Virus record (IMG/VR): IMGVR_UViG_3300009545_000018
Location: 186,001 to 250,000 of that record
Length of the DNA stretch: 64,000 bases
Reading direction: 5' to 3' (one strand)
The notes under the pieces were generated by a model, which made no database searches, was not told the DNA's origin, and was given only the letters and a program-made list of their open reading frames with translations. Position 1 is the stretch's first letter, and each line of letters starts with the position of its first letter. A program made the position numbers and the translations under genes. This document shows positions 1,756 through 25,788 of the stretch, piece after piece.

Positions 1756-2796
1756 ATGGTAATAAAGTTAGAAAACATAAATCCTAAGTTTAGAGAACAA
1801 ACTGATTTATTATTTTTTGGAAATAATCTGAATTTAGATATAAATAATTTTATTTTATTATTACATAGTAATTATATTCAACATTCAGAATATTTTTTTG
1901 ATAGATTCGTAAAATCTTGTGATATTTTTTGGGAAAATAATCAAGAACTTTGGTTTTATCGATTAAATTTTATCTTTTCTTTACAAGATAAAGGTCTTTC
2001 TAAGAAAGTTTCTTCTTTTTTAGAAAAAAGAATGTCAACCTTAATTCGTCGCAAATTTTGTATTTCTCCTAAATATGATGTGGAATTTTTACATTATTTA
2101 ACTTTATGTCAAATTAAAAAAAATAAAAATGAAGCTTTAGATTTTGCCTATAATTTTTTAGAAGAGTTGCCCTCTATATTCAAAATAGATAGTACTATTG
2201 AAGTCATAAAACATTTTATTCCTTTATTATATTCTGGAGTAGAAGATTATGCTGTAAGTATTTCTAAAAAAATAGATAATTCTTCCAAGAATTTTGTAAT
2301 ACTTAAAGCTTTAGAAAAACATGGTGTAGTTTATAATAGAAAGTATCTTATAGATTTAGCAGGCAATCTTTTAATTGAACGAGGAAATTCCGATAAAAAT
2401 AAAAGATTATTTTTTGCTTTAATTTCTGATTCAGAAATTTTGATTGGTTTAAAATCAAATTTTTCCTCTTTACATAAAAGAAAATTAATTGCATTTTTAA
2501 ATCAATGCGATCATACTTTATTAGAAGATTCTCATTTTAATAATATTAAAAATATTTTGGAATTAGATTGTTCTTTAGCGGAATCAGTAATTAAAATTTA
2601 TATTAGTAAATTATATTCACGACAATATACTCATACTAAATCTAATGCTGATAGATTAATTAGATTAATAAAGAAAGTTTCAATTATTTCTCCTAGAATA
2701 GTTTTTTCTTGTTTATCTGCTAAAAACAAAATGAGTGATATTAAATATATGCTTCCATATTTTCCAGAAGTAAAAAATATAGCGGCATTCTTATAA
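1756..2796 (+). CDS. Hypothetical helical protein ending in the recurrent C-terminal AF motif (NIAAFL)
   Basis: 346-aa ORF, no recognised family. Confidence 0.75.
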   Translation: MVIKLENINPKFREQTDLLFFGNNLNLDINNFILLLHSNYIQHSEYFFDRFVKSCDIFWENNQELWFYRLNFIFSLQDKGLSKKVSSFLEKRMSTLIRRKFCISPKYDVEFLHYLTLCQIKKNKNEALDFAYNFLEELPSIFKIDSTIEVIKHFIPLLYSGVEDYAVSISKKIDNSSKNFVILKALEKHGVVYNRKYLIDLAGNLLIERGNSDKNKRLFFALISDSEILIGLKSNFSSLHKRKLIAFLNQCDHTLLEDSHFNNIKNILELDCSLAESVIKIYISKLYSRQYTHTKSNADRLIRLIKKVSIISPRIVFSCLSAKNKMSDIKYMLPYFPEVKNIAAFL

Positions 2797-2823
2797 TTAG
2801 AAAGTTTAAATTAGGTATTTAAA

Positions 2824-3453
2824 ATGGGTTGTGATATTCATTTTTATATTGAACATTATTATAAAGATAAATGGCATTGTGTTAAGGAACCATCAGAATT
2901 TCGTCCTGAATGGGATAAAGATCCAAATATTAGATGGTATATAGGCAGAAGTTACCATTTATTTGGATTATTAGCGGGCGTTAGATCAAATGTATTACCA
3001 ACACCAATTGCTCCAAGAGGATTTCCTGAAGATGCTTCAGTTTTAGTTAAAAGAGAATTTAAAAAATGGGGTAGTGATGCACATACTCCATCATATATTC
3101 TTTTGACTGAATTATTAGATTTTGAAAATATAATAATAGATCAGCCTATCTATTTAAGCCCTCCAGAATATAAAAACTTTTTGAATAATTCTAATAATTT
3201 AGACATAAATTGTTTATATGAACGTGACGAAGATAATATTATCTCTTTTCAAGAATTAGAAAAAATAAGTAATTTATTGGCTTTTACCAATGATGATACG
3301 TACTTATATAAATATGCTAAAATTGATAATGTAAAATTACCACTTATTAGTTTTATAAATAATAATGTTATTTGGAAAGATGTAGTGCCAAAAATGAAAA
3401 AGTTAAATAAAGATCCATCTAAAGTAAGATGTGTTTTTTGGTTTGATAATTAA
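2824..3453 (+). CDS. Conserved phage hypothetical protein (MGCDIH...FWFDN type)
   Basis: Starts MGCDIH, contains RSYHLFGLLAGVR, PRGFPEDAS and HTPSY, ends VFWFDN. Confidence 0.75.
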   Translation: MGCDIHFYIEHYYKDKWHCVKEPSEFRPEWDKDPNIRWYIGRSYHLFGLLAGVRSNVLPTPIAPRGFPEDASVLVKREFKKWGSDAHTPSYILLTELLDFENIIIDQPIYLSPPEYKNFLNNSNNLDINCLYERDEDNIISFQELEKISNLLAFTNDDTYLYKYAKIDNVKLPLISFINNNVIWKDVVPKMKKLNKDPSKVRCVFWFDN

Positions 3454-4605
3454 ATGACACACCAATTATTTGATATAATTTGTAAAAAACAACCCTATTT
3501 AAAATGGGTTAAACAAAAAACCGTATTGTTAGTTCGTCATGGCAGCCACGCTTATGGAACTAATACCGAATCTTCAGATGAAGATTTTAAAGGAATTTTT
3601 ATTCCTCCCAAAAATTATTATCTGGGAACTGTCCATAGAATTGAACAGTTGGAGCTAAAAGCTCCAGATCCAGATTGTGTAATCTATGAACTTCGTAAAT
3701 TTTTTAATCTTGCTATGGACAACAATCCTAATATTATTGAAGTATTGCATACTTCTCCAGAAGATCACTTATTTGTTGACGAATTGGGCGAGATGATTTT
3801 AGATAGACGTAATGATTTTTTATCTAAAAAAGCGAAACATACGTTCTTGGGTTATAGTGTTAGTCAACTTAAGAGAATAAAAACACATAAAAAATGGTTA
3901 ATGAATCCGCCAGCAAAACCACCCACTCGTGAGCAAATGGGTCTTCCAGATTCAACATTGATTCCACAAGATCAGTTAATGGCAGTGCAAGCCGAAATTC
4001 AAAAAGAATTAGATAAAGCTCAATTTGATTTTATGGACAATTTAGATGAGCCAACTAAAATTGGCATCAGAACAATTATGTCTGAAATGTTGGCTGAATT
4101 AAAAATCACCAGTGATGATCATTGGATGGCAGCTTCTAGAAAAATTGGGCTTTCTGATAATTTCATAGAAATAATGAAGAAAGAAAGAGAGTATACTTCT
4201 AGAAAACGTGAATGGGACCAATATAATAATTGGAAAGCTAATCGCAATCCAACACGAGCAGCTTTAGAAGAAAAATATGGATTTGATTGTAAACACGCTT
4301 ATCACTTGGTTAGGCTAATTAGGATGTGTGAAGAAATTTTAACAACTGGTAAAGTTATTGTAAAGCGCCCGGATAGAGAAGAGCTTCTTTCTATTAGAAA
4401 TGGTGCTTGGTCTTATGAAAAATTAATTGATTTTGCTGAGTCCAAAGAGAAGAACTTAAATGAACTGTATAATACATGTAATGTTATTCCTAAAGTTCCT
4501 GATAAAGAATCTTTAGATAAATTATGCATTCAATTAATAGAAAAATCTATTTCTAACTATTCAATGTATTCTGTTAAAAAGAAATTTTATTCTATGATAA
4601 GATAA
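3454..4605 (+). CDS. Pol-beta superfamily nucleotidyltransferase (RlaP/YcgL-like) with helical insertion
   Basis: GSHAYGTNTESSDEDFKG (GS...DxD) motif; KHAYHLVRLIRMCEEIL C-terminal motif. Confidence 0.8.
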   Translation: MTHQLFDIICKKQPYLKWVKQKTVLLVRHGSHAYGTNTESSDEDFKGIFIPPKNYYLGTVHRIEQLELKAPDPDCVIYELRKFFNLAMDNNPNIIEVLHTSPEDHLFVDELGEMILDRRNDFLSKKAKHTFLGYSVSQLKRIKTHKKWLMNPPAKPPTREQMGLPDSTLIPQDQLMAVQAEIQKELDKAQFDFMDNLDEPTKIGIRTIMSEMLAELKITSDDHWMAASRKIGLSDNFIEIMKKEREYTSRKREWDQYNNWKANRNPTRAALEEKYGFDCKHAYHLVRLIRMCEEILTTGKVIVKRPDREELLSIRNGAWSYEKLIDFAESKEKNLNELYNTCNVIPKVPDKESLDKLCIQLIEKSISNYSMYSVKKKFYSMIR

Positions 4606-4638
4606 GAAAAATATCTCTCCGTAATAAGGCATAATTTT

Positions 4639-4989
4639 ATGAGTTATATAATCACCATCTCTCCCAAAGCCGCAATAGAGATTAAGAAAAAGTTAGTGGA
4701 ACGTAACTCTTCAAATTGTCATATAAGATTGGGAGTGAAAGGTGGTGGTTGTTCTGGATTTTCATATGTTCTTGAATATGAAGATAAAGAACCATTAGAA
4801 ACAGATCTTTTATTTTTTTCGGAAGATATTAAAATTGTAGTTGATAAAAAAAGTATTTTATATTTAAATGGCACTCAATTAGATTGGGAAAATAAATTAA
4901 TGTATACTGGATTTAAGTTTGTTAATCCATTAGAAACCTCAAAATGTGGTTGTGGACATTCTGTTAGCCTTAATAAGGAAAAATTATGA
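4639..4989 (+). CDS. iscA: A-type Fe-S carrier protein (IscA/HesB family)
   Basis: RLGVKGGGCSGFSY, IVVDKKSILYLNGTQLD, FKFVNP, CGCG. Confidence 0.92.
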   Translation: MSYIITISPKAAIEIKKKLVERNSSNCHIRLGVKGGGCSGFSYVLEYEDKEPLETDLLFFSEDIKIVVDKKSILYLNGTQLDWENKLMYTGFKFVNPLETSKCGCGHSVSLNKEKL

Positions 4990-5210
4990 TTCATGGAATT
5001 TATATAAAAAATAGACCCAAAGGTTCATGGCAATTAGTATCCATTGCTATTTCTGCTGAAGCAGTGAATCAAGATATACATAAAATAACTAAACAAGCAC
5101 AAAAAGAAGGAAAAACAGATATCCAAGTTGGTTTTCAGATTTTTGAATCTGAATATAATATTCCAGAGTTTCTTAAAGAATTAAAAGAACAAAAATTAAT
5201 CTATAATTAA
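4986..5210 (+). CDS. Hypothetical protein
   Basis: ATGA-coupled ORF, 74 aa. Confidence 0.7.
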   Translation: MIHGIYIKNRPKGSWQLVSIAISAEAVNQDIHKITKQAQKEGKTDIQVGFQIFESEYNIPEFLKELKEQKLIYN

Positions 5211-6166
5211 TGCAAATTTCACTGTTCTATCAATGGTTTAAAGACTTTAAACCACTTTATAATTATTTAGAAGAGAACCCTAATGATGTTATGTATTTTG
5301 ATAACATGTTAGAGGTGTTTATTAATAAACAAAATATTCTTAATTTAAATTCAATATTATCTACTTTTCAAAATAAAAGATATTATATTGGTAGTACTTT
5401 TAAAGAACATTTGATTCAATTTTTTGTTAAAAACGATGATGAAATTTTAGATTTAGCAATAAGTTATTTTTTAAGTTGTCAAGATAAAGAATATGCCCTC
5501 TTATTGTTAAACGAATTAAAAAAGCAAAATCATCATAAATATTTTAATTATATAGATGATTTTTTGGCTCTAGATGATTTTACTGATAATTTTGTTATAA
5601 ATAATTTTCTAAATATTATAGAAAAAAATCATAAATATATAATTCGGCAATTGCTTATCAAAAAGCAATTTATCTCCTTAAGTAACTATATACAAATTTT
5701 GGTACCATCATTATCTTCTTTTGATATTTCTTCATTATGTCAACAAATAGCTAGTATTAAATATTATGAAGGTCAGCATTTGCCAAATAATGACTATTTT
5801 TCCTTAATTCTCAAAATTTTTTACAAGTCTTCAACTTTTGATCATTATAACTTTAATTATTTGATCAGTAATTATGATAGGTTTCAATTTTCTTATTATC
5901 TAATAAACTACTATCATAATAACATTAACTTATTAAGTAAGTGGGGAACATATTTAAAATATTATTTTGAATATGATTATTTAACTTTTGAGGACATGAT
6001 TCTAGATAAAGTTGATGGATATAACTTGGTTTTATATAGTAAAATAAATTATGAATGTTCTAAAAGAAAATTTTTAGAAAAAATATTATCGCTTAAAGAT
6101 CAAGATTTATTAGCTAACTTTGTTAAATATCATAGTGAATTTCAAAAATTATTACCCTTATTGTGA
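5210..6166 (+). CDS. Hypothetical helical protein
   Basis: 318-aa ORF coupled to upstream gene (TAATG). Confidence 0.7.
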   Translation: MQISLFYQWFKDFKPLYNYLEENPNDVMYFDNMLEVFINKQNILNLNSILSTFQNKRYYIGSTFKEHLIQFFVKNDDEILDLAISYFLSCQDKEYALLLLNELKKQNHHKYFNYIDDFLALDDFTDNFVINNFLNIIEKNHKYIIRQLLIKKQFISLSNYIQILVPSLSSFDISSLCQQIASIKYYEGQHLPNNDYFSLILKIFYKSSTFDHYNFNYLISNYDRFQFSYYLINYYHNNINLLSKWGTYLKYYFEYDYLTFEDMILDKVDGYNLVLYSKINYECSKRKFLEKILSLKDQDLLANFVKYHSEFQKLLPLL

Positions 6167-6207
6167 TAAGCTTATGTAAAGACTCATGTTATATATTTAT
6201 GTGAAAC

Positions 6208-7320
6208 ATGAGTAATGCACTAAATCTTTCAGAAATAAATCAAGAAGAAGCTCTTAAGCTAGGTAAATTTTTTATTAAATCACGTCAAAACTTATTTCTC
6301 TTTGGCAGACGTGGAGTGGGTAAAACACATATAATTTTACAAGCAGCACAAGAGTGTAAGGTAAAAGTAAATTATATTAATTTAAGTGTGGTTGAAAGAC
6401 CTGATTTAGCTGGTTATCCTGATATTCATAGTAGTGGAGACGTAGTAACTTATAAATCTCCACAATTTCTTCCTAGATTATTAGAAGATGCTGATCCGGA
6501 TAGCATCATCCTATTTGATGAAGTAGATAAAGCCCCCATTGAAGTTACAGCTCCATTATTAGAAATCTTACAATTCGGTAAAGTTAACAATAATAAAGTT
6601 AATGCATTATGTTGTATTCTTACTGGAAATTTAATTAATGAGAATTCCTATTCTAATCAAATAAGTTCTGCCCTATTAGATAGGGGCGCAAAATATGTTT
6701 TATCATTTAATTTTGACAAATGGGTTGAATGGGCAAAAGATAATCAAATTAATGATTTAATTTTGGGTTTCTTAAAAAACAATATAGAATTTGCTTGTGG
6801 TAAAATTGAAGATTCTAATTATGCAAGTCCCTCTCCAAGAGGTTGGACATTAGCATCAGAAGCTTTGTTAAAAGCCAAATCATTAAAAATTTCTGATATA
6901 GAAAGTATAACTCAAATTATTTCTGGATTTGTAGGTAACGAAGCCGGTCTAAGATTTAAAATATGGTATGAGAATTTTAGAAGGTTTGAACCATATATTC
7001 ATCAATTAATTGATACTGGATCAATGTTATTCAATTTTAATGAACTATCACCTTCTGAAAAGTTAATATTTTCTATTTCAGTTTGTTATTATACTAAAAA
7101 TAAAGTATTAACAAACAATCGCAAATCCAAAAACAGATTTGCTGATTTAGAAAATTTATGTAAGTTTTTTAAATCATATGAGATGAGTGAAGAGGTCAAG
7201 GTTATGGGACTCAATAATTCATTTGACTTTAATATGATAACTAAAATGAAGCTATACGAGTGTAAAGAATTTTTTGATTTATTTAATCAAATAACTGAAA
7301 AATTACAATTCAAAAAATAA
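6208..7320 (+). CDS. AAA+ ATPase (MoxR/dynein-related-like)
   Basis: Walker A GRRGVGKT, Walker B ILFDEVDKA, SALLDR arginine-finger region, SPRGW. Confidence 0.85.
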   Translation: MSNALNLSEINQEEALKLGKFFIKSRQNLFLFGRRGVGKTHIILQAAQECKVKVNYINLSVVERPDLAGYPDIHSSGDVVTYKSPQFLPRLLEDADPDSIILFDEVDKAPIEVTAPLLEILQFGKVNNNKVNALCCILTGNLINENSYSNQISSALLDRGAKYVLSFNFDKWVEWAKDNQINDLILGFLKNNIEFACGKIEDSNYASPSPRGWTLASEALLKAKSLKISDIESITQIISGFVGNEAGLRFKIWYENFRRFEPYIHQLIDTGSMLFNFNELSPSEKLIFSISVCYYTKNKVLTNNRKSKNRFADLENLCKFFKSYEMSEEVKVMGLNNSFDFNMITKMKLYECKEFFDLFNQITEKLQFKK

Positions 7321-7376
7321 AACATTGTCCCTTGACACTTATTTTATAAAATTTACCTTATAAACATCGAGGATAA

Positions 7377-7700
7377 ATGAGCGCATTGAATCACATTAAT
7401 GATAATAATTTTGAAGCAGAAGTGATAAATTCTGAAGTACCAGTTTTAATAGAATTTGGTGCAGTGTGGTGTGGACCATGTAAAAGACAATTGCCAATAT
7501 TAGAAGAATTTGCAGAATCTAATAAAGACTCTGTAAAAGTATTATCTTTAGATATTGATGAGTCCCCAGTAGTTACTGGTAAATTTAATGTAAGAGGCGT
7601 TCCAACCCTCATGTTATTTAAAGATGGCAAAAAAGTTGGAGTTAAAGTTGGCTTAACAACCAAAGCTGGATTAGAAAATTTATTAAAGGAAAATTTATAA
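7377..7700 (+). CDS. trxA: Thioredoxin
   Basis: WCGPC active site, FNVRGVPTLMLFKDG; GGAGG SD. Confidence 0.95.
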   Translation: MSALNHINDNNFEAEVINSEVPVLIEFGAVWCGPCKRQLPILEEFAESNKDSVKVLSLDIDESPVVTGKFNVRGVPTLMLFKDGKKVGVKVGLTTKAGLENLLKENL

Positions 7701-7728
7701 ACTATTTTTAATAAGTTAAGCCAAGAGC

Positions 7729-7759
7729 AAAACCAGCTTTAAAGCTGGTTTTTTATTTT
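7729..7759 (+). terminator. Intrinsic terminator downstream of trxA
   Basis: Perfect inverted repeat AAAACCAGCTTT/AAAGCTGGTTTT running into a T tract. Confidence 0.75.
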
Positions 7760-7770
7760 GGAGTAATAGT

Positions 7771-8013: not shown

Positions 8014-8029
8014 GAAAGCAAAATAATAA

Positions 8030-9300: not shown

Positions 9301-9362
9301 TAACAAATATAACTAAATTTTAGATTTCTAAAAACAATTACAAAATTATTTAGGTAAATAAT

Positions 9363-9599: not shown

Positions 9600-9600
9600 T

Positions 9601-11163: not shown

Positions 11164-11673
11164 ATGTCACAGCAATTCATTATCTTCCATGATCCAGAAT
11201 ATGATTCAAATAATCAAGCCTATGGTTATTATATAACTGGCGTACTTCCCATTAACAAATTTATAGAAACTTGTCTGTTTGATACAAATGCACCTTATTC
11301 TAATCAAGGTTTTTATGTAGCTACTACAGAAAATAATAAAGTTTGTTATGAATGTATAATACAAAAAGATCCCCAAATATTAAATATTCTTAATTTTATT
11401 GTTACTGGCAATGATTATACGGCAAAAATAAAAAAGTTTGAATTGGGTATGGATGAGCTTAGGCGCATTACTCCAGTAGCTGATCCTTCTGCAAGAAGAT
11501 GCCCTATTTGTAAACAAAAGAAAGCATATAAACAATCTTTTGATGGTTATTATGGTTTTAAATGCAATGAGTGTCATATAGGTTATATTGGACCCGGACA
11601 ATTTTATTACAATGGTAAAATATATAATCCGATCCAAGCTGGGAAGATTTTCAAAATGAAGGCGTTTAAATAA
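11164..11673 (+). CDS. Hypothetical protein with Zn ribbon (CPIC...CNEC), ending KMKAFK
   Basis: Two CxxC pairs; C-terminal AF motif. Confidence 0.7.
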   Translation: MSQQFIIFHDPEYDSNNQAYGYYITGVLPINKFIETCLFDTNAPYSNQGFYVATTENNKVCYECIIQKDPQILNILNFIVTGNDYTAKIKKFELGMDELRRITPVADPSARRCPICKQKKAYKQSFDGYYGFKCNECHIGYIGPGQFYYNGKIYNPIQAGKIFKMKAFK

Positions 11674-12956: not shown

Positions 12957-13697
12957 ATGAACAAACTTTTGTTTGAAAGTGATTTTAGCTCAGACTCTTT
13001 AAGATGGATTAAAATTAGAGAAGAGAAAAAATTAAATAATTTTTCTAATAAAGAATCCTTTGATGATTTAAAGGTTACGATTTTAGAGCATCTACAAGAA
13101 GAAATTATAATGGCTAAGGATACTGCATTAGCGTATTTTTTTGCTTGTGACTTTTTATATAAAATATATAAAATGCAAAAAGTGATTTTAGATAATGGAG
13201 ACGCAAAATATGCTTTTTTATTTGCTCAAAACATTAAACATTGTGATGTAAAAGCATTACAAAATTTAGTTTTAAGTTCAAAAAAAACCAAGTATATTTG
13301 TAAATTTGCTTGTTTTGTTAAGAATGCAGATTTACTTTCTTTAGAAAAAGTAATTTTAAAATCTAAAAATGTTAAATATGCTCATATGTATTTAAAACAT
13401 GTGAAAAATGCGAATGTTGCTAAGTTTAAAAAAATAATTTTTAATTCAAAAAAACCCAGATATTTATATGAATTAGCTAGGCATTTAAAGGATCCAAAAG
13501 AAATATCTAAAATTGAAGATTTAATTATTGAATCCAAATCTTTTACTTACATGAGATTATTTGCAGAAAAAATAAAAACAGCTAATGTTGATAAAATAGA
13601 GACGGCAGTATTACAATTAGATAATACTTTAGAAATTCAAAAATTTGCCAAATATGTAAAGAAATCTAAAATGAAAAAATTCTTAATTGTTAGTTAA
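12957..13697 (+). CDS. Alpha-helical tandem-repeat protein (about 28-aa repeats)
   Basis: At least five repeats of the form xKYxxxFAxxvKxAdvxxlexxilxSKx. Confidence 0.75.
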   Translation: MNKLLFESDFSSDSLRWIKIREEKKLNNFSNKESFDDLKVTILEHLQEEIIMAKDTALAYFFACDFLYKIYKMQKVILDNGDAKYAFLFAQNIKHCDVKALQNLVLSSKKTKYICKFACFVKNADLLSLEKVILKSKNVKYAHMYLKHVKNANVAKFKKIIFNSKKPRYLYELARHLKDPKEISKIEDLIIESKSFTYMRLFAEKIKTANVDKIETAVLQLDNTLEIQKFAKYVKKSKMKKFLIVS

Positions 13698-16809: not shown

Positions 16810-17328
16810 ATGAAAGTAAGCAAATCATTAAAAGATATTAGTGAGTATTTGAAGCAAATAGAATATATTACAGAAAAAGTAAATTTTATAAAAAAAGAAA
16901 TTCCTGATATTAAAGTAAAACTTTATACAAATTGTATTTCTTTTTATCCTAGATTTGTGGCTGAATCTGTTAATCAAAATTATACTGGATTAGATTTTCA
17001 TAAACGTTATGATACATTATCAGTAAGCCCATATCAAACAGTTGATTTTTCTTTTAACAATAAAATTGAAAAAGTAAAAATACATTCTAATCCAGGAACA
17101 AGTAGATTGGTGTATATTACTCGTAGATATGATAATAAATCTGGCATTATGTTATATCAGTTAAATTTTTCAAAGATGACAATTAATTTTGAAAGAAATC
17201 AATTTAACAATTCGATGTTAAATAATTGTCGATTAGAAATTTTAAGTTTTATGAATAAACATTCAAATATTACAGTAAACACTAAGCATTTGGATCCTAA
17301 ATTAAAAAACTTAATGGCATTTACATAA
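16810..17328 (+). CDS. Hypothetical protein ending LKNLMAFT
   Basis: GAGG SD; C-terminal AF motif. Confidence 0.7.
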   Translation: MKVSKSLKDISEYLKQIEYITEKVNFIKKEIPDIKVKLYTNCISFYPRFVAESVNQNYTGLDFHKRYDTLSVSPYQTVDFSFNNKIEKVKIHSNPGTSRLVYITRRYDNKSGIMLYQLNFSKMTINFERNQFNNSMLNNCRLEILSFMNKHSNITVNTKHLDPKLKNLMAFT

Positions 17329-18277: not shown

Positions 18278-18317
18278 TATAATTAGGGGGACATATTTCT
18301 TCCCTTAAGGATAATAT

Positions 18318-18776: not shown

Positions 18777-18826
18777 TTTACTCATTTAAATTGATAAGAA
18801 TATTGTCATATTAAGTATGAGGAAAC

Positions 18827-20218: not shown

Positions 20219-20233
20219 ATAATTTGGTGTTAA

Positions 20234-21724
20234 ATGAGTATAATTAAAACAATTATTGATTTTTATGGATCCGATTTTATGAGATTCAAAAAAGTATTAG
20301 ATATTGGCTGTGGGCATGGTGATATTAGTGGAGCCTTATGTAGATTAGGTAGTGATGTTACTTGTGTTGATGCTAGACAAGATTATTTAAAGATAATTTC
20401 AAAAAAATATTCTAGTATTAAAGTAGTTAAAGCAGATTTAGATGGAACTTGGCCATTTATTGGTAAAAAATTTGATTTAATTATTGATGTTGGGCTTTTA
20501 TGTCATTTGAGAGATTATGAGGCTCACCTAAAAGCTATTTGTCAATCTACTACACATTTAGTATTGGAAAGTGCCGTTTGTGACTCTAATGACGCTTATA
20601 GGTGCGTTTCTGTTGCCGAGAACCCTAAACTTAGTAATCTTTCAGCAAATGGATTAGGATGCCGCCCCAGTGCCTTAGCAATTGAAAGAATATTAAAAGA
20701 ATGTGGTATGAATTTTAAAAGAATTGATAATTCTAAATGTAATTCTGGAAAAAATATTTATGATTGGATCGAATCTAATGATGAAAGTATTGATTTAAAC
20801 AAAAGAAGAATTTGGTTTGCTATTAAATCTACCACTGCAAGTAAACTTAACTCTGTAAATTTTATTAATAAATCTTCAGTTCCACCTCCACCAATAAAAG
20901 GTTTTGTGCCTATACTTAAAGACAGTAAAGTACCTGTAACTCATTCTAATACTATTAGTGCTAGCCCCAAACAATTAAATCCACAACATAAAATATTAAA
21001 GGTTGCTATTTGCTTATCTGGACACATGAGGACATTTGAAAATAACTTTCAAAGTTTCAAAGATAATATTCTATCTAAATATGATTGTGATGTATTTATT
21101 CATACTTGGGATATTATGGGTTCATCATTTAGATTTACTGATAATAAATTACATTTAGTAAATACACAAAAATATTTAGAGAAAATAGAATTATTTTATA
21201 ACCCTAAAAAAATCGTTATTGAGCCTTTTAGATTGTTTGATTTAACACCACTTATGAAACAAAGAGCGGTTCATGGCAGAGATGCAGGCGGAACAATTAG
21301 TATGTATTATAAAATTGAGGCTTGTAATAATCTTAAAAAAGAATATGAAAAAGAAAATAATATGACTTATGATTGTGTTATTAGATACAGATCTGACCTA
21401 CATTTAGATCAACCTTTTCCATTAACTACTGGCACTGACTTATCAGCTATACATGTTCCTATGTATGGAAATTTTGGTGGAATTAATGATCAATTAGCTT
21501 TTGGTAATTCTGCCTTAATGGATATATATTGCTCGCTATATTCTAATATTGAAAACTTATTACAAAATGGCGCCAATTTAAATCCAGAGAAACTTTTAAT
21601 GGCTCACGTTAATTCCTATAATATTCCAATTATTAAAGATTATATTAAATATAGTATTAGAAGGGCTAATGGTATGGTACAAGATAATATGTTGTTAGAG
21701 CGGGCATTGGGATTCATTAAATGA
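20234..21724 (+). CDS. Class I SAM methyltransferase fused to a putative glycan-modifying domain
   Basis: VLDIGCGHG, CVDAR, GLLCHL; low-complexity Pro linker; then VAICLSGHMRTF...YDCVIRYRSDL...NDQLAFG. Confidence 0.75.
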   Translation: MSIIKTIIDFYGSDFMRFKKVLDIGCGHGDISGALCRLGSDVTCVDARQDYLKIISKKYSSIKVVKADLDGTWPFIGKKFDLIIDVGLLCHLRDYEAHLKAICQSTTHLVLESAVCDSNDAYRCVSVAENPKLSNLSANGLGCRPSALAIERILKECGMNFKRIDNSKCNSGKNIYDWIESNDESIDLNKRRIWFAIKSTTASKLNSVNFINKSSVPPPPIKGFVPILKDSKVPVTHSNTISASPKQLNPQHKILKVAICLSGHMRTFENNFQSFKDNILSKYDCDVFIHTWDIMGSSFRFTDNKLHLVNTQKYLEKIELFYNPKKIVIEPFRLFDLTPLMKQRAVHGRDAGGTISMYYKIEACNNLKKEYEKENNMTYDCVIRYRSDLHLDQPFPLTTGTDLSAIHVPMYGNFGGINDQLAFGNSALMDIYCSLYSNIENLLQNGANLNPEKLLMAHVNSYNIPIIKDYIKYSIRRANGMVQDNMLLERALGFIK

Positions 21725-22407
21725 AAATAGCAATTTGCTTATCAGGTCATTTAAGAAAATTTGAAAACACTTTTCCTTCTTTAGAAAAATATTTTCTTAG
21801 TCGATATGATTGTGACATTTTTATTCACACTTGGGATAAATTAGGATATCAATCCAGATTTAAACATGATTCAAGCATTAATAATACTGAACATAAGTTA
21901 GATATAATTAATTTATCATATAAGCCCAAGAAAATAGTTATAGAATCAAGTGATTTTATTGAAACTTTAAGAAAAGAATCTGTTTCGTATGCACCATACT
22001 TATTAAATGAGCCAAAGCCACCACATCATATGGCTTCTATGTTTTATAAAATCTTTGCATGTAATGAACTTAGAAAATATTATCAATTAGAAAATAAAAT
22101 AGAATATGATTGGATTATTAGATGTAGAAGTGATTTATTATTTCATGGTAATATTAATCTTCCAAATTTAGATATTGAAAATAAAATATTTATACCGCGT
22201 TCTATTTTTCATCCACAATGGTATAATGATCAATTTGCTATTGCTTCCCCAAATAACATGGATATATATGCATCTTCTTATTTTGATATTCCAGAATATT
22301 TTAAAATAAAAGAAGAATATTTTCCGGAAAAATTTATGATGTGGACCCTTAATCGTAAAGGTTTTTCGGCAGAAGTTTGTGACGGTCATTTTAGTATTTT
22401 AAGGTAA
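21721..22407 (+). CDS. Stand-alone paralogue of the SG(H)xR / DxxIRxRxD / NDQxA domain, putative glycosyltransferase-like
   Basis: KIAICLSGHLRKF, DIFIHTWD, YDWIIRCRSDL, NDQFAIA, PEKFM; clearly homologous to the C-half of the upstream gene. Confidence 0.7.
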   Translation: MKIAICLSGHLRKFENTFPSLEKYFLSRYDCDIFIHTWDKLGYQSRFKHDSSINNTEHKLDIINLSYKPKKIVIESSDFIETLRKESVSYAPYLLNEPKPPHHMASMFYKIFACNELRKYYQLENKIEYDWIIRCRSDLLFHGNINLPNLDIENKIFIPRSIFHPQWYNDQFAIASPNNMDIYASSYFDIPEYFKIKEEYFPEKFMMWTLNRKGFSAEVCDGHFSILR

Positions 22408-22424
22408 TTTTATTATATTACACT

Positions 22425-22958
22425 ATGGGAAATAAAGGTCGTTTTAATATTTTAAAAAAAATAGCTCAAGGTGCTATTAATCAAATGGTTACTGATGAGG
22501 TAAATAAAAATAAATCAGTAGCAGGATCTCCTACTTCCTTTACAGCCACAAATGCTTATCCTACTATAATTCAAGGTTTTGGTGCCAATAATATTTCTTG
22601 GATTAATGGATTGTCTAACGTATTAAATGATGCACTTTATTATACTAGTAATGGTCAAATTGATTTAAACTGGATGAAATCTAATAATTTTAATGCAGGT
22701 TCATCACAAGTTCCCTCTGAAGATTTAAAAAAAATTATAGCTTTTTGTAAAGCGGTTTACAATTATTTATATACTAATTTGGGACAAAATTTTACCCATT
22801 TGTTACCTAAAGACCAAATATTAGAAAAAGTTAAAATTTTAACTAATAATCAATCTTTAATTAATTTACCAACTGTAACTAATAATGGTCAATTAAGAAC
22901 CAAAATTGGTGGTAATTTAAAAACAATTATTCAAAATTATTTATTGCAAATAAAATAA
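22425..22958 (+). CDS. Hypothetical N/Q-rich protein, possible virion protein
   Basis: 177-aa ORF; N-terminal ILKKIAQ. Confidence 0.7.
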   Translation: MGNKGRFNILKKIAQGAINQMVTDEVNKNKSVAGSPTSFTATNAYPTIIQGFGANNISWINGLSNVLNDALYYTSNGQIDLNWMKSNNFNAGSSQVPSEDLKKIIAFCKAVYNYLYTNLGQNFTHLLPKDQILEKVKILTNNQSLINLPTVTNNGQLRTKIGGNLKTIIQNYLLQIK

Positions 22959-22979
22959 GTCAGTTATAGAGACTATAAA

Positions 22980-23765
22980 ATGTCTAATAATACTCTTAAA
23001 GACCGCATTGAGTCTTATCAAAAAACTACAAATTATACCCTGCTTAACAAAGTTCCGCTAATAATTAATGTTAATGGTAAAAATTTTTCAAAAATTACTT
23101 CATTATTAGAAAAGCCTTATGATAGTAATTTTGCTGAATGTATGTTTTCTACTGGATTAAGATTATGTAATGATATTGAAGGTATCGTTTTTGGTTATCA
23201 ACATAACGATGAAATTACTTTAATTATGCGTAATAATCAAAATGATGATACTATTCCTTGGTTTGATAATAATCTACAAAAAATTTGTTCAGTTACCTCT
23301 GCTATTGCAACCATGCATTTTAATGAATGTGCTTCTGAAATTAAAATGAATATGTTGGGAGATCCAATATTTACATGTGAAATATTTCCAGTACCTACAG
23401 TTGCAGAGGCTATTAATACTATGGTGTTTAAGCAACAACAAAATTTTCTTAGTTCTCTTCATTTTGCTTGTTTATACGAATTATTAAAAACTCATGATAA
23501 ACACACTATTAAAGAAATGTTATCTGGATTAAGTTCTGATGAAAAAATTGACTTATTAAAACAAGAAGCTAAAATAGATTTTAATAATTATCCATTACCA
23601 TTTAAACGAGGAATAGGTTATTATAAGGTTCCTAAAATAGTAGATGGTAAAATGAAAGCTAAATGGTTTCTTAATTCGGAATTGCCAATTTTTACTAGAG
23701 ATCAATCTTTTTTAAATAATATTTTAAAAAATGGGATGGATATTTTTAGAGAAAATGGTTTGTAA
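22980..23765 (+). CDS. Thg1-like (3'-5' polymerase fold) protein, first catalytic Asp apparently replaced by Asn
   Basis: LKDRIESYQ, IINVNGKNFSKIT (canonical xDGxxFxxxT), YQHNDEITL, WFDNNLQKICSV, FKRG. Confidence 0.8.
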   Translation: MSNNTLKDRIESYQKTTNYTLLNKVPLIINVNGKNFSKITSLLEKPYDSNFAECMFSTGLRLCNDIEGIVFGYQHNDEITLIMRNNQNDDTIPWFDNNLQKICSVTSAIATMHFNECASEIKMNMLGDPIFTCEIFPVPTVAEAINTMVFKQQQNFLSSLHFACLYELLKTHDKHTIKEMLSGLSSDEKIDLLKQEAKIDFNNYPLPFKRGIGYYKVPKIVDGKMKAKWFLNSELPIFTRDQSFLNNILKNGMDIFRENGL

Positions 23766-23784
23766 AATTTAAAAATAGTTTGAC

Positions 23785-23814
23785 TTGACGAAACTTTACC
23801 AGAGGTTATATTAT
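23785..23814 (+). promoter_or_regulatory. Sigma70-like promoter for the tRNA-Thr/tmRNA cluster
   Basis: TTGACG at 23785-23790; TATATT at 16-nt or TATTAT at 18-nt spacing; tRNA starts at 23841. Confidence 0.6.
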
Positions 23815-23840
23815 AGGCATAACAAAACATTTTTAAATAC

Positions 23841-23914
23841 GCTGATTTAGTATAGTGGTATTACCCCGCCCTTGTAACGCGGTCACAACAGTTCGATTCT
23901 GTTAATCAGCTCCA
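23841..23914 (+). tRNA. tRNA-Thr(UGU)
   Basis: Cloverleaf: GCTGATT/AATCAGC acceptor, anticodon loop CT-TGT-AA (C31:C39 mismatch), TTCGATT T-loop, encoded CCA. Confidence 0.9.
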
Positions 23915-23981
23915 ATAGATATTGAGAATAAAGAGTAATGAAATGTAACATTATTCTCAACATTTCAGCAATATCTAATAC

Positions 23982-24056
23982 GCTGTGGTAATTCAGTGAT
24001 AGAATCCCTGCATGGTAAGCAGGTTGTCGCGGGTTTGATTCCCGCCCACAGCTCCA
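23982..24056 (+). tRNA. tRNA-Thr(GGU)
   Basis: GCTGTGG/CCACAGC acceptor, CCTGC-ATGGTAA-GCAGG anticodon arm, GCGGG-TTTGATT-CCCGC T arm, CCA. Confidence 0.9.
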
Positions 24057-24074
24057 AATATTATAGGAATTATA

Positions 24075-24260
24075 ATGAATTATGTATGTTCAAATTGCGG
24101 ACATATTTGTGGTAAAGACACTCGTATGGGTGTTGATTATTATTTAATATGTAGTTGTAGTTCTAATAAAATTTGGATTGATGATGGTAGAGGCGGATAT
24201 TATTCATATTTGAATGATGCTCACCCAATACCTGCTAATCAATTTAAAAGCAGAAGTTAA
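24075..24260 (+). CDS. Small Cys-rich (Zn-binding) protein
   Basis: AGGA SD; CSNCGHIC...CSC. Confidence 0.6.
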   Translation: MNYVCSNCGHICGKDTRMGVDYYLICSCSSNKIWIDDGRGGYYSYLNDAHPIPANQFKSRS

Positions 24261-24279
24261 ATTCTGTTGTTACGAATAT

Positions 24280-24633
24280 GGGATCGACATAGTTTCGACG
24301 TGGTTTGAAGTATTGAATTGCAAGTCCCTAATTATTGTCAAAGGGTAATATAAACAATAAACGTTCAAATGCAAACGACAATAGCATTGCTCCATTAGCA
24401 CAAGTTGCTTGATGGATACCTTGAGATGAGATATTTTTGGTAATCAAAAAGGTATTAACCCACTAAAAATAGTTCTTAAATTATCTATGGATTTAAGAAT
24501 AAAATAAACATTAGATAGCCTGTAAAGCAAATTTTACAAATGTTGTTAATTACATTCTTAATTAACTAAACTTGTGAATGATTTTCAATATGAATTATCA
24601 CGGATTCCGGGGCAGTACCGGACGATTCCACCA
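24280..24633 (+). ncRNA. ssrA: tmRNA, one-piece; tag (A)ANDNSIAPLAQVA
   Basis: 5' GGGATCG pairs with 3' CGATTCC-ACCA giving a G3:U70 Ala determinant; TTCGAC 5' motif; tag ORF GCAAACGAC...GCT TGA at 24371-24412; T arm TCCGG-GGCAGTA-CCGGA. Confidence 0.92.
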
Positions 24634-24650
24634 AATAAGTAAATATCATC

Positions 24651-24944
24651 ATGATTAAAATTGTAGATTGGTTGCAACCATTAATAGATTGGTTTTGGGA
24701 TAATAGAAAAACCATTTTATTACAAGCAGAATCTAATACAGAAACTCTTGGAGACTATTTTGGTTACAATATTTATTATCCTAAATATGGCGGCATTCCA
24801 GAAGAAATTTATAAACAATTATCCGCAAAGCATTTAAGTACTTTAAATGTATGGACCGTTTATTTATTACAAACGACAAAAAACAAAAAAGAATTTAGTC
24901 AATCATTAATGAATGAATTAACCAATTATACTGTTATTGTTTAA
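24651..24944 (+). CDS. Hypothetical protein
   Basis: 97-aa ORF. Confidence 0.6.
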   Translation: MIKIVDWLQPLIDWFWDNRKTILLQAESNTETLGDYFGYNIYYPKYGGIPEEIYKQLSAKHLSTLNVWTVYLLQTTKNKKEFSQSLMNELTNYTVIV

Positions 24945-25542
24945 ATATATTTTTAAAAGTATCAAAGAAATTATTATTTGAAGTATCAATAGGTTCAGGA
25001 TCACTAGATAATTCTTTAATAGTATTTTCAAAAGTATTATCATTCATATATTTGTTAAAATAAAAATTCATTAATTTAACGTAATCAGCTTCAGATGCAG
25101 TATAGTAATAAGCTAATTTGAGTAAATGAGCAAAGGCGGCAGGATTACCAGACTCAACAGCGGACCATGCACTTTTAAATCTATTTGTTAGTTTTTCAAG
25201 ATAAAAGAACGCGCCTTCTTCTATATTTTCAAATGATCTAAACCAAGCTCCAGGATTTTCAGGATCTAAAACGACACGTGTTCCATTAATAATTTCCCAA
25301 ACTCCAGTTAAGGCACAATACTCAATAGTTTTATTAGGATCATCTATTGCTTTTATATTTCCCAAATTAAAATTCCAACAAGATTGTCCTTCTCCCGTTT
25401 CCACTCCCCATTGAGAATATAAAACGCCAATTTGTTCTTTTTTTGGAAATGAACCAAACTTATTTTTCCAGGCTATAGTTACTGATTTAATATAATCATT
25501 TTTAGTAAATTTTGTTTTTATGGCAGGGACTCTTTTTAACAT
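24934..25542 (-). CDS. GH73/glucosaminidase-like peptidoglycan hydrolase
   Basis: SQWGVETG (catalytic Glu), NFNLGNIK, FRSFENIEEG...Y, YYTA..Y. Confidence 0.72.
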   Translation of the reverse strand: MLKRVPAIKTKFTKNDYIKSVTIAWKNKFGSFPKKEQIGVLYSQWGVETGEGQSCWNFNLGNIKAIDDPNKTIEYCALTGVWEIINGTRVVLDPENPGAWFRSFENIEEGAFFYLEKLTNRFKSAWSAVESGNPAAFAHLLKLAYYYTASEADYVKLMNFYFNKYMNDNTFENTIKELSSDPEPIDTSNNNFFDTFKNIFKQ

Positions 25543-25563
25543 TGCAACCTCTTCATTAAAGAT

Positions 25564-25788
25564 ATGGAAATATTAACTGACATTTTTTATGATGAAAATG
25601 GTTTAGCAAAAATATTCTATATAGAGCCAGTGTTTGGGTGCTCTAATGTTAAATTAGCAACAGGTGTTTATTATTTATATAATGAGCCTTATTATAATAG
25701 AAAAGTGTATTTTCTGTTAGGAAAACAAATTAATTGTAGCTCTAACGAAGAATTTGAAAAAATTTTAAAGCTTAAAGCTTTTATGTAA
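25564..25788 (+). CDS. Small hypothetical protein ending SNEEFEKILKLKAFM
   Basis: 74-aa ORF; C-terminal AF motif. Confidence 0.7.
   Translation: MEILTDIFYDENGLAKIFYIEPVFGCSNVKLATGVYYLYNEPYYNRKVYFLLGKQINCSSNEEFEKILKLKAFM

What the first reader, a model, noticed from the sequence alone, without database searches (positions are those of the whole stretch)
1756..25788. Unrelated proteins share a C-terminal K-x-[LIM]-x-A-F-x-COOH motif
Seen: 1756-2796 ends VKNIAAFL, 11164-11673 IFKMKAFK, 16810-17328 LKNLMAFT and 25564-25788 ILKLKAFM. An internal copy EKISNLLAFT occurs in 2824-3453, and looser basic-hydrophobic tails occur in 5210-6166 (FQKLLPLL) and 12957-13697 (MKKFLIVS). The protein bodies are otherwise dissimilar. 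Inference: a shared C-terminal address, such as a degron for the phage ClpP/AAA/M41 proteases, a virion-packaging or injection tag, or a docking peptide for one hub protein.
Basis: partly seen in the sequence, partly recalled or inferred. Interest (0 to 1): 0.6.

Follow-up and report, generated by a model that had tools for sequence, protein, structure and literature searches.

The report
Shared C-terminal tag on phage proteins
About one gene in seven of this 448-kb uncultured soil phage ends in the same short, position-locked peptide (…K-L-K-A-F-x-COOH) on otherwise unrelated small proteins. This looks like a proteome-wide address tag read by one still-unknown partner, and I found no description of such a tag in phages.

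Summary
All four cited tails are present. In the whole 447,763-bp genome, 71 of 745 ORFs end in A-F-x-COOH against about 1.9 expected. A 12-residue profile finds about 100 tails at C-termini but only 5-13 matches among 129,720 internal windows.

The consensus is [KR](-9) Φ(-8) x K(-6) [LM](-5) K(-4) [A/S/V](-3) F(-2) x(-1)-COOH.

- **Protein-level selection.** Synonymous codons and stop codons vary as in the rest of the genome.
- **Unrelated bodies.** The 99 tail proteins fall into 59 groups with no detectable similarity: a MORN-like family, a zinc-ribbon family and 54 singletons. None has a membrane segment.
- **Modular tail.** Homologous bodies occur with and without it. It is the best-conserved segment of the families that have orthologues.
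- **Lineage dialects.** Four sister megaphages have 13-30 F-type tails each. A more distant one has about 40 tails with Met in place of Phe and no F-type tails.

Best reading: a docking or address tag read by one shared partner, possibly the phage's own proteolysis set (two ClpP, a Cdc48-like AAA ATPase, a stand-alone FtsH-type peptidase). The partner is not identified. One co-folding test gave no answer. I found no description of this motif in the papers searched.

The parts
1756..2796 (+). 346-aa tail-bearing protein, possibly an alpha-solenoid. The tail is coded at 2758-2793 (...YFPEVKNIAAFL).
   Evidence: Profile score 10.0. An orthologue at 41% identity in a 354-kb IMG/VR phage ends ...FPNLKKLAAFI. 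The ESM Atlas model is low-confidence and ARM/TPR-like.
11164..11673 (+). 169-aa orphan tail-bearing protein. The tail is coded at 11635-11670 (...QAGKIFKMKAFK).
   Evidence: Profile score 18.3. No relatives found. Only a weak, sub-threshold Pfam zinc-ribbon hit.
16810..17328 (+). 172-aa tail-bearing protein of a conserved family ('family A'). The tail is coded at 17290-17325 (...LDPKLKNLMAFT).
   Evidence: Three of the 9 invariant columns of the six-sequence family alignment lie in the last 7 residues. All 15 further IMG/VR orthologues end ...LKKL[LM]xF[TIR]-stop, though these were found through the tail pattern itself. AlphaFold2 pLDDT is 87, with the tail as helix 163-170.
25564..25788 (+). 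74-aa degenerate MORN-like protein. The tail is coded at 25750-25785 (...EFEKILKLKAFM).
   Evidence: Profile score 28.2. It belongs to the S-x-E-E-F-E-K-L-L-K-L-K-A-F-W subfamily, which a tail profile finds 30 times among 1.84 billion proteins; 29 of the 30 matches end at the C-terminus.
3253..3288 (+). Internal copy of the tail (LEKISNLLAFT, ending at residue 155 of 209) inside ORF 2824-3453.
   Evidence: Best internal profile match in the genome, 19.6 bits. The whole ORF matches phrog_10141 of unknown function.
13650..13685 (+). Near-terminal copy of the tail (KKSKMKKFL) followed by three more residues (IVS) in ORF 12957-13697.
   Evidence: Profile score 12.2.
35802..36981 (+). Two tandem ClpP paralogues (35802-36389 and 36376-36981). 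They are candidate, unproven readers or effectors of the tag.
   Evidence: Pfam CLP_protease at 155 and 170 bits. Present in all relatives examined, including the Met-dialect genome.
43774..45135 (+). Single-ring AAA ATPase of the Cdc48/VAT/YjoB type with a conserved 200-residue N-domain. It is a candidate, unproven receptor.
   Evidence: Co-folding with a tail protein gave no answer.
59455..60117 (+). Stand-alone FtsH-type (M41) peptidase domain with the HEAGH motif. It is a candidate, unproven effector.
   Evidence: HEAGH is kept in all five genomes.

Best explanation
The tail is a modular, position-locked C-terminal docking tag. It is a short helix ending in [LM]-K-[A/S/V]-F-x-COOH, preceded by [KR]-hydrophobic-x-K, and it sits on about 100 otherwise unrelated small soluble proteins of this megaphage. 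It is read in trans by one shared partner.

Shown:
- The motif exists and is locked to the free C-terminus.
- It is selected at the protein level.
- It is carried by unrelated bodies and can be present or absent on homologous bodies.
- It is conserved across a clade of 330-480-kb phages.
- Its key residue differs by lineage: Phe in five genomes, Met in one.

Inferred: a single receptor pocket takes the penultimate Phe (or Met) together with the terminal carboxylate. That would explain why exactly one residue, of almost any kind, must follow the Phe.

Most speculative step: the receptor belongs to the phage's own proteolysis set (ClpP pair, Cdc48-like AAA unfoldase, stand-alone FtsH peptidase domain). 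The fast-evolving bodies (MORN hairpins, zinc ribbons, an alpha-solenoid) would then be either timed substrates (tail as degron) or adaptors that bring bound host proteins to the protease (tail as tether). Poxvirus ankyrin/F-box proteins and the SspB tail that tethers cargo to ClpX work this way.
For: Enrichment and position lock:
- 71 of 745 ORFs end in A-F-x against 1.9 expected.
- The profile gives 95-102 C-terminal hits against 5-13 of 129,720 internal windows.
- All 38 K[LIM]KAFx occurrences are terminal.
- Shadow ORFs show no enrichment.

Protein-level selection: codon use at the six motif positions tested matches the genome (p = 0.05-0.69), stop codons vary and downstream DNA is not conserved.

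Unrelated bodies: 54 BLAST groups among 71. Iterated profile searches give 59 groups among 99, with only two large families.

Modularity:
- G000 151913 (348 aa, with tail) aligns over residues 1-319 to a G004 homologue that has no tail.
- G000 103433 shares its domain with a 170-aa G004 protein that has a different C-terminus.

Constraint:
- Identity in the last 9 residues is 56-62% whether bodies are 25% or 53% identical.
- In family A, 3 of 9 invariant columns are in the last 7 residues.
- The locus-search tool picked the tail as the most conserved stretch of that family.

Spread: G001 has about 30 tails, G004 about 25 and G003 about 13. A 394-kb phage has 9 among 48 neighbouring genes.

Dialects:
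- G005 has 38 C-termini of the form [KR]-[LFY]-x-[VI]-M-x against 9 internal matches, and no F-type tails. The other four genomes have no M-type tails.
- One orthologous family switches ...DPKLWAFK / ...NLWVFH to ...DPKLWNMK.
- G006 has about 20 paralogues ending ...YL[VI]F-x.

Solubility: 0 of 99 tail proteins have a membrane-like segment, against 37 of 303 other small ORFs.

A protease set is encoded in the window.
Against: - No receptor was identified.
- ClpP, the AAA ATPase, trigger factor and the M41 domain are all present in G005, which uses the other dialect. Their presence therefore does not track the F-type tail. The N-domain of the AAA ATPase is highly conserved even in G005.
- Both AlphaFold2 models place the tail as a confident helix (pLDDT 85-92). 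It could therefore be packed on its own body rather than free.
- Only one clear orthologous family shows the Phe-to-Met switch. The dialects could therefore reflect separate expansions from different founders.
- Tail-bearing bodies share an unusual composition: Tyr 7.5% against 4.4%, Ala 2.6% against 5.2% in other small ORFs. That hints at a shared structural class.
Confidence: 0.45

Rival explanations
1. One hyper-diverged multigene superfamily. All tail proteins descend from a few small beta-rich founders whose C-terminal helix is a core structural element that covers the sheet. Bodies diverged beyond recognition while the helix stayed, so no external partner is needed.
For: - Narrow size range: 92 of 99 are 51-135 aa.
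- Tandem arrays: 40 of 99 tail genes are followed by another tail gene.
- Shared Tyr/Asn/Ile-rich, Ala-poor composition.
- Two families hold 39 of the 99.
- AlphaFold2 gives the helix high confidence.
- In solved MORN4-Myo3a, which is among the weak fold matches, a helix lies on the MORN sheet (plus my own knowledge of that structure).
Against: - The tail also sits on a 346-aa possible alpha-solenoid, on 348-, 212- and 172-aa proteins, and on small proteins that by my reading of their sequences, not by a prediction, look helical.
- It is present or absent on homologous bodies.
- Identity-level invariance (Phe and never Leu/Ile/Tyr; exactly one residue after it; Lys at -4, -6 and -9) exceeds what packing on unrelated cores needs.
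- The two dialects are mutually exclusive by lineage.
Confidence: 0.25
2. Encapsidation or ejection tag. The tail binds the inside of the procapsid (coat, scaffold or portal), so a cocktail of small proteins is packed and injected with the DNA. Encapsulin cargo-loading peptides and the coat-binding C-terminal helix of the P22 scaffolding protein work this way.
For: - A short basic-hydrophobic C-terminal peptide on soluble cargo is the design of those known systems (my own knowledge).
- The bodies are diverse and fast-evolving, as expected of anti-defence cargo.
- The ClpP genes are followed by a 463-aa ORF that, by my reading of its sequence, looks all-helical. PHROG scores the ClpP genes as head maturation protease.
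Against: - Tail genes lie in small-gene arrays far from the large-gene block at 260-360 kb, which I take to be structural; this was not checked.
- About 100 different cargo species would be unprecedented.
- No virion proteome exists.
- The Pfam ClpP scores (155-170 bits, full length) fit true ClpP better than a prohead protease.
Confidence: 0.12
3. Action in cis as a nascent peptide. The last roughly 12 residues sit in the ribosome tunnel when the stop codon is reached. They modulate release by RF2 or re-initiation on the overlapping next gene.
For: - The position lock relative to the stop codon is what termination-stage arrest peptides show (my own knowledge).
- Tail genes are more often within 10 nt of the next start: 61 of 92 against 137 of 302, p = 5e-4.
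- The phage RF2 gene is present in all four F-type genomes compared and absent from G005, G006 and G007.
Against: - The tail is predicted as part of a folded protein.
- Tight spacing also follows simply from tandem duplication.
- The RF2 correlation is a single phylogenetic contrast, and G006 has Hb-F-x tails without RF2 on its 76%-complete record.
- Tails end at TAA, TGA and, twice, TAG.
Confidence: 0.07
4. Membrane-targeting amphipathic helix of the MinD/FtsA type.
For: The tail is basic and hydrophobic, lies at the extreme C-terminus and has a net charge of about +2.
Against: - The hydrophobic moment at 100 degrees (alpha-helix) is average: 0.255 against 0.274 for random windows.
- The periodicity is 3 residues, with the peak at 120 degrees: 0.456 against 0.261.
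- Invariance of a single Phe and of the exact end position is not a feature of such helices.
Confidence: 0.03
5. A DNA- or RNA-level signal (promoter, terminator or recombination site) that happens to be translated, or a chance or compositional effect of an AT-rich genome.
For: The genome is 31% G+C, and the tail residues K, L and F have AT-rich codons.
Against: - All four Ala codons, six Leu codons, both Lys and both Phe codons are used as in the genome at large.
- Composition-preserving shuffles give at most 5 cases.
- The motif persists in genomes of 33-39% G+C.
- It is absent from other frames.
Confidence: 0.01

Closest known systems
Poxvirus ankyrin-repeat proteins with a C-terminal PRANC/F-box-like domain
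   Same: A large, fast-evolving viral multigene family. Variable protein-binding bodies carry one conserved C-terminal element that plugs them into a single degradation hub.
   Different: PRANC is a domain of about 40-50 residues that binds eukaryotic Skp1. Here the element is about 12 residues, depends on the free C-terminus, occurs in a phage, and has an unknown hub. No sequence relation (Pfam scans negative).
C-terminal tags and tethers of bacterial AAA+ proteases (ssrA ...YALAA, MuA ...RRKKAI, the SspB C-terminal ClpX-binding peptide ...LRVVK)
   Same: Short basic and/or non-polar peptides at the extreme C-terminus, read by one unfoldase, and transferable between proteins.
   Different: Different sequence, with an invariant penultimate Phe. 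The phage has no ClpX. Those tags mark a handful of proteins or are added by tmRNA; they are not genome-encoded on about 100 proteins.
HbYX motif (hydrophobic-Tyr-any-COOH) of proteasome activators
   Same: The same logic at the end of the chain: a small or hydrophobic residue, then an invariant aromatic residue, then one free-choice residue whose carboxylate is needed.
   Different: The residue is Phe or Met, not Tyr. The carriers are small and diverse proteins not known to form rings. No 20S or HslV gene is in the phage.
Encapsulin cargo-loading peptides and microcompartment encapsulation peptides
   Same: Short terminal peptides that address otherwise unrelated soluble proteins to one protein shell. 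Encapsulin shells have the phage HK97 fold.
   Different: Those peptides usually follow a flexible linker and mark a few enzymes encoded next to the shell gene. The consensus differs (for example LTVGSLRR). No shell link is shown here.
C-terminal secretion signals read by FtsK/HerA-type ATPases (the last residues of type VII EsxB; type IV effectors)
   Same: Substrates of about 100 aa with a C-terminal signal. An FtsK-family ATPase is encoded in the window (38788-39786).
   Different: The phage ATPase matches the FtsK DNA-translocase motor far better (E = 1e-42) than EccC or YukB (E = 1e-12). No secretion apparatus is seen.

Membership tests
ssrA-like / ClpX C-motif degrons | Signal at the extreme C-terminus with a free carboxylate | tested here: met
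   All strong matches are terminal. 29 of 30 database matches end at the last residue.
ssrA-like / ClpX C-motif degrons | Sequence of the known classes (...LAA, or basic-basic-Ala-hydrophobic) | tested here: not met
   The consensus K-[LM]-K-A-F-x has an invariant penultimate Phe that is absent from those classes (the classes are from my own knowledge).
ssrA-like / ClpX C-motif degrons | A cognate ClpX, and degradation that depends on the tag | not testable with these tools
   No ClpX gene in the phage. The host is unknown. Degradation needs an experiment.
HbYX proteasome-docking motif | Hydrophobic-Tyr-any at the C-terminus | tested here: not met
   Position -2 is Phe (Met in G005) and never Tyr in the 71 A-F-x tails. 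Position -3 is mostly Ala.
HbYX proteasome-docking motif | A 20S or HslV ring to dock on | tested here: not met
   No Proteasome-family match in the genome. A host ring cannot be excluded.
Sliding-clamp binding motifs (beta-clamp QL[SD]LF; PIP box QxxLxxFF) | Conserved Gln and the spacing of the hydrophobic residues | tested here: not met
   Position -8 is Tyr/Leu/Phe/Ile, not Gln. Only the L-x-x-F spacing resembles a PIP box.
Sliding-clamp binding motifs (beta-clamp QL[SD]LF; PIP box QxxLxxFF) | A clamp gene, with replication or repair proteins as carriers | tested here: not met
   No DnaN found. The carriers are small orphan proteins, not replication enzymes.
MinD/FtsA-type membrane-targeting sequence | Amphipathic alpha-helix (high hydrophobic moment at 100 degrees) | tested here: not met
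   The moment at 100 degrees is 0.255 against 0.274 for random windows. The peak is at 120 degrees.
Encapsulin cargo-loading / microcompartment encapsulation peptides | Terminal peptide after a flexible linker, with cargo encoded beside the shell gene | tested here: inconclusive
   The tail is terminal, but it is modelled as continuous with the fold. Tail genes are scattered over 18-168 kb and 310-433 kb, with most in 18-168 and 360-433 kb. The shell gene was not identified.
MORN-repeat proteins (bodies of one subfamily only) | Match to the Pfam MORN models, and a beta-hairpin repeat fold | tested here: inconclusive
   No Pfam hit. The AlphaFold2 model is a hairpin array whose only fold matches are weak ones to MORN1 and MORN4 (E about 0.3).
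Poxvirus PRANC / F-box | F-box-like domain detectable by profile | tested here: not met
   No Pfam family in 27 of the 28 tail proteins and related window ORFs scanned; the exceptions are one sub-threshold zinc-ribbon hit and one sub-threshold DUF5057 hit. Scans. The resemblance is functional only.

The most novel reading that the evidence does not exclude
This clade of uncultured megaphages runs a genome-encoded, proteome-wide tagging system. More than 100 rapidly diversifying small binder proteins (MORN hairpins, zinc ribbons, helical repeats) each carry a 12-residue C-terminal plug (...K-L-K-A-F-x-COOH). The plug docks them onto a phage-encoded protease assembly (ClpP pair, Cdc48-like AAA, split FtsH peptidase), so host defence or housekeeping proteins bound by the bodies are destroyed. 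It would be a bacterial-virus counterpart of viral hijacking of ubiquitin ligases. The plug and its socket would co-evolve, which would explain the Phe and Met dialects.
Probability: 0.15. Interest if true: 0.92.

Novelty: new variant of a known kind. Interest (0 to 1): 0.78.

Why it matters
Short terminal address tags are a known principle: ssrA, F-box adaptors, cargo-loading peptides, secretion signals. I found no report of a phage devoting about 13-16% of its genes to proteins that share one genome-encoded C-terminal tag.

If the tag is read by one partner, it gives a direct handle on roughly 100 orphan 'dark matter' genes per genome. One pull-down with a 12-residue peptide would name the hub. 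The hub would then suggest a common function for the whole set.

The two lineage-specific forms, Phe and Met, offer a natural specificity-swap experiment. The tag could also become a portable tool for degradation, targeting or loading.

If instead the tail is a structural helix of one exploded gene family, the result still defines the largest multigene family seen in these phages and gives a simple way to recognise its members.

Tried and rejected
- **Database searches on the bodies.**
  - A word-indexed search of 5.8 billion proteins with the 74-aa window protein returned only itself.
  - Megablast of 15.7 kb against cultured phages found nothing.
- **Cultured jumbo phages.** Atu_ph07 and PA5oct have MORN-like small proteins but no tail.
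- **Literature.** Full-text searches for the peptide strings, and for huge phages with a C-terminal motif, found nothing relevant.
- **Co-folding.** The phage AAA ATPase with a MORN-type tail protein scored 0.00. The verdict was 'no answer', so this is evidence neither for nor against binding.
- **Phyletic profile.** 75 G000 proteins are shared with the three F-type relatives and absent from G005. They include RecA, two Dam-type methylases, a 5'-3' exonuclease, CYTH and RF2. That is too many, and too ordinary, to single out a receptor.
- **HbYX-like end of the AAA ATPase.** It ends ...IYE in G000 and ...YFK in G001, G003 and G004. In G006 the same ...DKYFK is followed by SKG, and G005 lacks it, so this lead is weak.
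- **FtsK-like ATPase (38788-39786) as a type VII or type IV style signal receptor.** It resembles the FtsK DNA motor far more than EccC.
- **Genes not found in the phage.** ClpX, DnaN and proteasome/HslV.
- **Fold searches.** The family A model gave only sub-noise matches, Z of 5.3 or less.
- **Expression.** The only run holding the sequence is the probable source rhizosphere DNA run. There is no RNA run, so I did not use read laying.
- **Limits of the tools.** Model coordinates are not returned, so I could not measure whether the tail is buried.

Full report
**Where the window lies.** The window is bases 186,001-250,000 of a single 447,763-bp virus record with 31% G+C. The only sequencing run that holds it is a rhizosphere metagenome, which is probably its source. 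The window carries a replication and proteostasis block:
- DnaE-type Pol III alpha;
- a topoisomerase;
- a primase-like zinc finger;
- SbcCD-like proteins;
- an FtsK-like motor;
- two ClpP genes;
- an AAA ATPase;
- trigger factor;
- an M41-like peptidase domain;
- two tRNAs with anticodon CTA.

Relatives are uncultured IMG/VR phages of up to about 480 kb, 53 loci in all, with 52-87% Pol III identity.

**The observation.** I called ORFs of at least 50 aa over the whole genome with a crude longest-ORF, non-overlapping rule, which gave 745 ORFs. Of these, 71 end in A-F-x-COOH. Most end in K-[LM]-K-A-F-[LIWT].

Controls:
- Composition predicts 1.9 cases. Shuffles give a mean of 1.6 and a maximum of 5.
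- The dipeptide A-F is found 71 times with one residue after it, but only 0-4 times at any other offset from the end.
- All 38 K[LIM]KAFx strings in the proteome are terminal.
- Rejected shadow ORFs show 3 of 529.

A 12-residue profile built from the A-F-x tails of three genomes scores 95-102 G000 C-termini above 8-10 bits, but only 5-13 of 129,720 internal windows. Once the 99 positives are removed, Leu(-5) with Phe(-2) is still eight-fold enriched. Among ORFs of 200 aa or fewer, Phe stands at -2 in 137 against 27.6 expected. The true number is therefore about 100-120, or 13-16% of all ORFs.

The consensus is hydrophobic(-11) x [KR](-9) [YFLI](-8) x K(-6) [LM](-5) K(-4) [A/S/V/I](-3) F(-2) [L/I/W/T...](-1). 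It is often preceded by a Ser/Asp-x-x-Glu helix cap.

**Protein level, not DNA level.** The tail codons use all four Ala codons, six Leu codons and both Lys and Phe codons in genome-typical proportions (chi-square p = 0.05-0.69). Stops are TAA, TGA or TAG, and the DNA after the stop is unrelated. The motif also persists in relatives with 33-39% G+C. A promoter, terminator, recombination site or compositional artefact is excluded.

**Who carries it.**
- Tail proteins are small: 92 of 99 are 51-135 aa.
- They lie in tandem arrays at 18-168 kb and 310-433 kb, with most in 18-168 and 360-433 kb, always on the local coding strand.
- None has a membrane-like segment, against 37 of 303 other small ORFs.

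With the tail removed, BLAST gives 54 groups among 71 bodies. Iterated profile searches against four genomes give 59 groups among 99:
- a 24-member family that I take to be the one starting M-x-C-P-x-C (zinc ribbon);
- a 15-member family that I take to be the one with H-R-x-D-G-P-A...W-Y-x-N-G repeats;
- three pairs;
- 54 singletons.

The repeat family folds with high confidence (pLDDT 89.7) into a beta-hairpin array plus a C-terminal helix at residues 88-99, with Phe100 and Trp101 just after the helix. Its only fold matches are weak ones to MORN proteins.

The 172-aa window protein (16810-17328) folds at pLDDT 87 into an alpha/beta domain with no clear known fold, and its tail is helix 163-170. 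The 346-aa window protein (1756-2796) looks like an alpha-solenoid in a low-confidence Atlas model. By my own reading of the sequences, some small bodies look helical. The tail therefore sits on different kinds of body. However, most small bodies share a Tyr/Asn/Ile-rich, Ala-poor composition.

**Modularity and constraint.**
- A 348-aa tail protein aligns over residues 1-319 with a G004 homologue that ends differently and has no tail. A 95-aa tail protein shares its domain with a 170-aa G004 protein that continues differently.
- Where orthologues exist, the tail is the best-kept part. In the family of window ORF 16810-17328, three of nine invariant columns are in the last seven residues.
- The locus-search tool chose the tail as the most conserved stretch of that family. 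All 15 further orthologues, at 30-49% identity, end ...L-K-K-L-[LM]-x-F-[TIR]-stop. They were found through that same pattern, so this set is biased.
- The orthologue of window ORF 1756-2796, at 41% identity, ends ...LKKLAAFI.
- Over 75 homologous pairs, identity in the last nine residues is 56-62% whatever the body identity (25-53%). It is still 42% between unrelated tail proteins.

**Spread and dialects.** I fetched six related genomes whole.

| Genome | Pol III identity to G000 | Tails found |
|---|---|---|
| G001 | 72-77% group | about 30 F-type |
| G004 | 72-77% group | about 25 F-type |
| G003 | 72-77% group | about 13 F-type |
| G005 (48% G+C) | 57% | no F-type; 38 C-termini of the form [KR]-[LFY]-x-[VI]-M-x, often with Cys at -8, against 9 internal matches |
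| G006 | 61% | about 20 paralogues ending ...Y-L-[VI]-F-x |
| G007 | 57% | none; an unrelated repeated C-terminus |

- In G005, Met at -2 occurs 55 times against 13.5 expected. The four F-type genomes have no M-type tails.
- One orthologous family reads ...DPKLWAFK (and the paralogue ...DPKLWIFK) in G000, ...NLWVFH in G001 and G004, and ...DPKLWNMK in G005. A G005 protein ends ...EEEFEKLKCML, like the repeat subfamily.
- A 394-kb phage from another sample has 9 tails among 48 neighbouring genes, plus a ...I-T-F-S variant.
- A profile of the tails searched against 1.84 billion proteins returns 30 significant hits. All are small unnamed metagenomic proteins of the repeat subfamily, and 29 of the 30 matches end at the last residue.
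- Cultured jumbo phages with similar repeat proteins lack the tail.

**What this means.** Four features argue for one trans-acting partner whose pocket takes the penultimate side chain and the terminal carboxylate:
- an element that must end exactly one residue after an invariant Phe;
- tolerance of almost any last residue;
- transfer between unrelated bodies;
- a change of key residue by lineage.

This is the logic of HbYX tails, PDZ ligands and the C-terminal peptides read by AAA+ proteases.

The hydrophobic positions repeat every three residues (-11, -8, -5, -2). The hydrophobic moment is high at 120 degrees and average at 100 degrees. That fits a groove-docking helix better than a membrane-surface helix.

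The main rival is common descent: a structural helix retained in one exploded family of small beta-rich proteins. The confident helix in both models, the tandem arrays and the shared composition support it. The dialects could come from different founders, because only one clear orthologous switch was found. I could not inspect model coordinates to see whether the Phe is buried.

**The partner.**
- two full-length ClpP genes;
- a Cdc48/VAT/YjoB-like AAA ATPase with a conserved N-domain;
- a 220-aa stand-alone FtsH-type peptidase domain with HEAGH, so FtsH appears to be split into two soluble proteins;
- trigger factor.

All of these also occur in G005, so they do not discriminate between dialects. 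The phage has no ClpX, DnaN or proteasome gene. The one co-folding job, AAA ATPase with a repeat-type tail protein, gave no answer. I therefore hold 'shared receptor' at moderate confidence and 'the receptor is the phage protease set' as a minority sub-claim.

Other rivals:
- **Packaging tag.** The precedents are encapsulin cargo peptides and the P22 scaffold helix.
- **Nascent-peptide effect at termination.** Tail genes are more tightly coupled to the next gene, 66% against 45% within 10 nt. The phage RF2 gene is present in the four F-type genomes compared and absent from G005, G006 and G007. However, tandem duplication explains the spacing, and G006 has F-ended tails without RF2 on its 76%-complete record.

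**Novelty.** I found no paper mentioning these peptides or such a motif in huge phages. No family model covers the carriers. The principle of a terminal address tag on many proteins is known. A genome-encoded tag on about a seventh of a phage's genes, with lineage dialects, is to my knowledge not.

Noticed in passing
G000 (outside the window): 2-19 kb, 45 kb and 437-447.5 kb; loci L099, L101: A second C-terminal motif. Fifteen small ORFs (58-169 aa) end in P-I-x-COOH against 1.85 expected. All but one sit at the two ends of the record, where the Phe-type tail is absent. G001 and G004 have only 3 and 2.
   Followed up: partly
window 26881-27035; G000 425360-426439 (L113:5360-6439): Two adjacent tRNAs with anticodon CTA (amber suppressors) and a phage-encoded RF2-type release factor (SPF and GGQ motifs). 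TAG ends only 39 of 745 ORFs, and the large genes at 250-350 kb are not fragmented. TAG therefore looks rare rather than widely recoded.
   Followed up: partly
window 43774-45135 and 59455-60117: FtsH appears to be split into two soluble proteins. One is a Cdc48/VAT/YjoB-like AAA ATPase with its own 200-residue N-domain. The other is a 220-aa stand-alone M41 peptidase domain with HEAGH. Both are kept in G000, G001, G003, G004 and G005.
   Followed up: partly
window 35802-41086 and 57601-58848: A conserved block: ClpP, ClpP, a 463-aa protein that looks all-helical by my reading, a 117-aa ORF, a 332-aa FtsK-motor-like ATPase and a 435-aa ORF with no family. A full-length trigger factor lies elsewhere in the window. 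All six genes of the block and the trigger factor have homologues in G001, G003, G004 and G005.
   Followed up: partly
G005 (loci L118-L139), e.g. 29-61 kb and 340-390 kb: About 40 small ORFs end in [KR]-[LFY]-x-[VI]-M-x-COOH, often with Cys at -8. This is a Met 'dialect' of the tail in a 48% G+C relative that has no Phe-type tails.
   Followed up: yes
G006 (L181-L197) and G007 (L198-L214): G006 has about 20 paralogues of roughly 110 aa ending ...KYHDQVM[DG]YL[VI]F-x. G007 has about 17 proteins sharing a different C-terminus...K[IV]VEIDGKRYKLEE[VI].
   Followed up: no
proteins P0004 and P0009 (other metagenomic phages); L163:10001-10489: Two-unit proteins in which the first unit's tail (...KLKAFF...KLKAFG) is internal and a second unit with its own terminal tail follows. 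They are either fused tandem genes or a lost stop codon.
   Followed up: no
G000 arrays, e.g. 428.9-432.8 kb (L113) and 51-52.5 kb (L101): 38 ORFs start with a C-x-x-C pair in the first 14 residues, mostly M-x-C-P-x-C. At least 22 of them carry the tail. Many overlap the previous stop codon as ATGA.
   Followed up: partly
window 2824-3453: The 209-aa ORF matches phrog_10141 (unknown function) end to end and carries the strongest internal copy of the tail, at residues 144-155.
   Followed up: no
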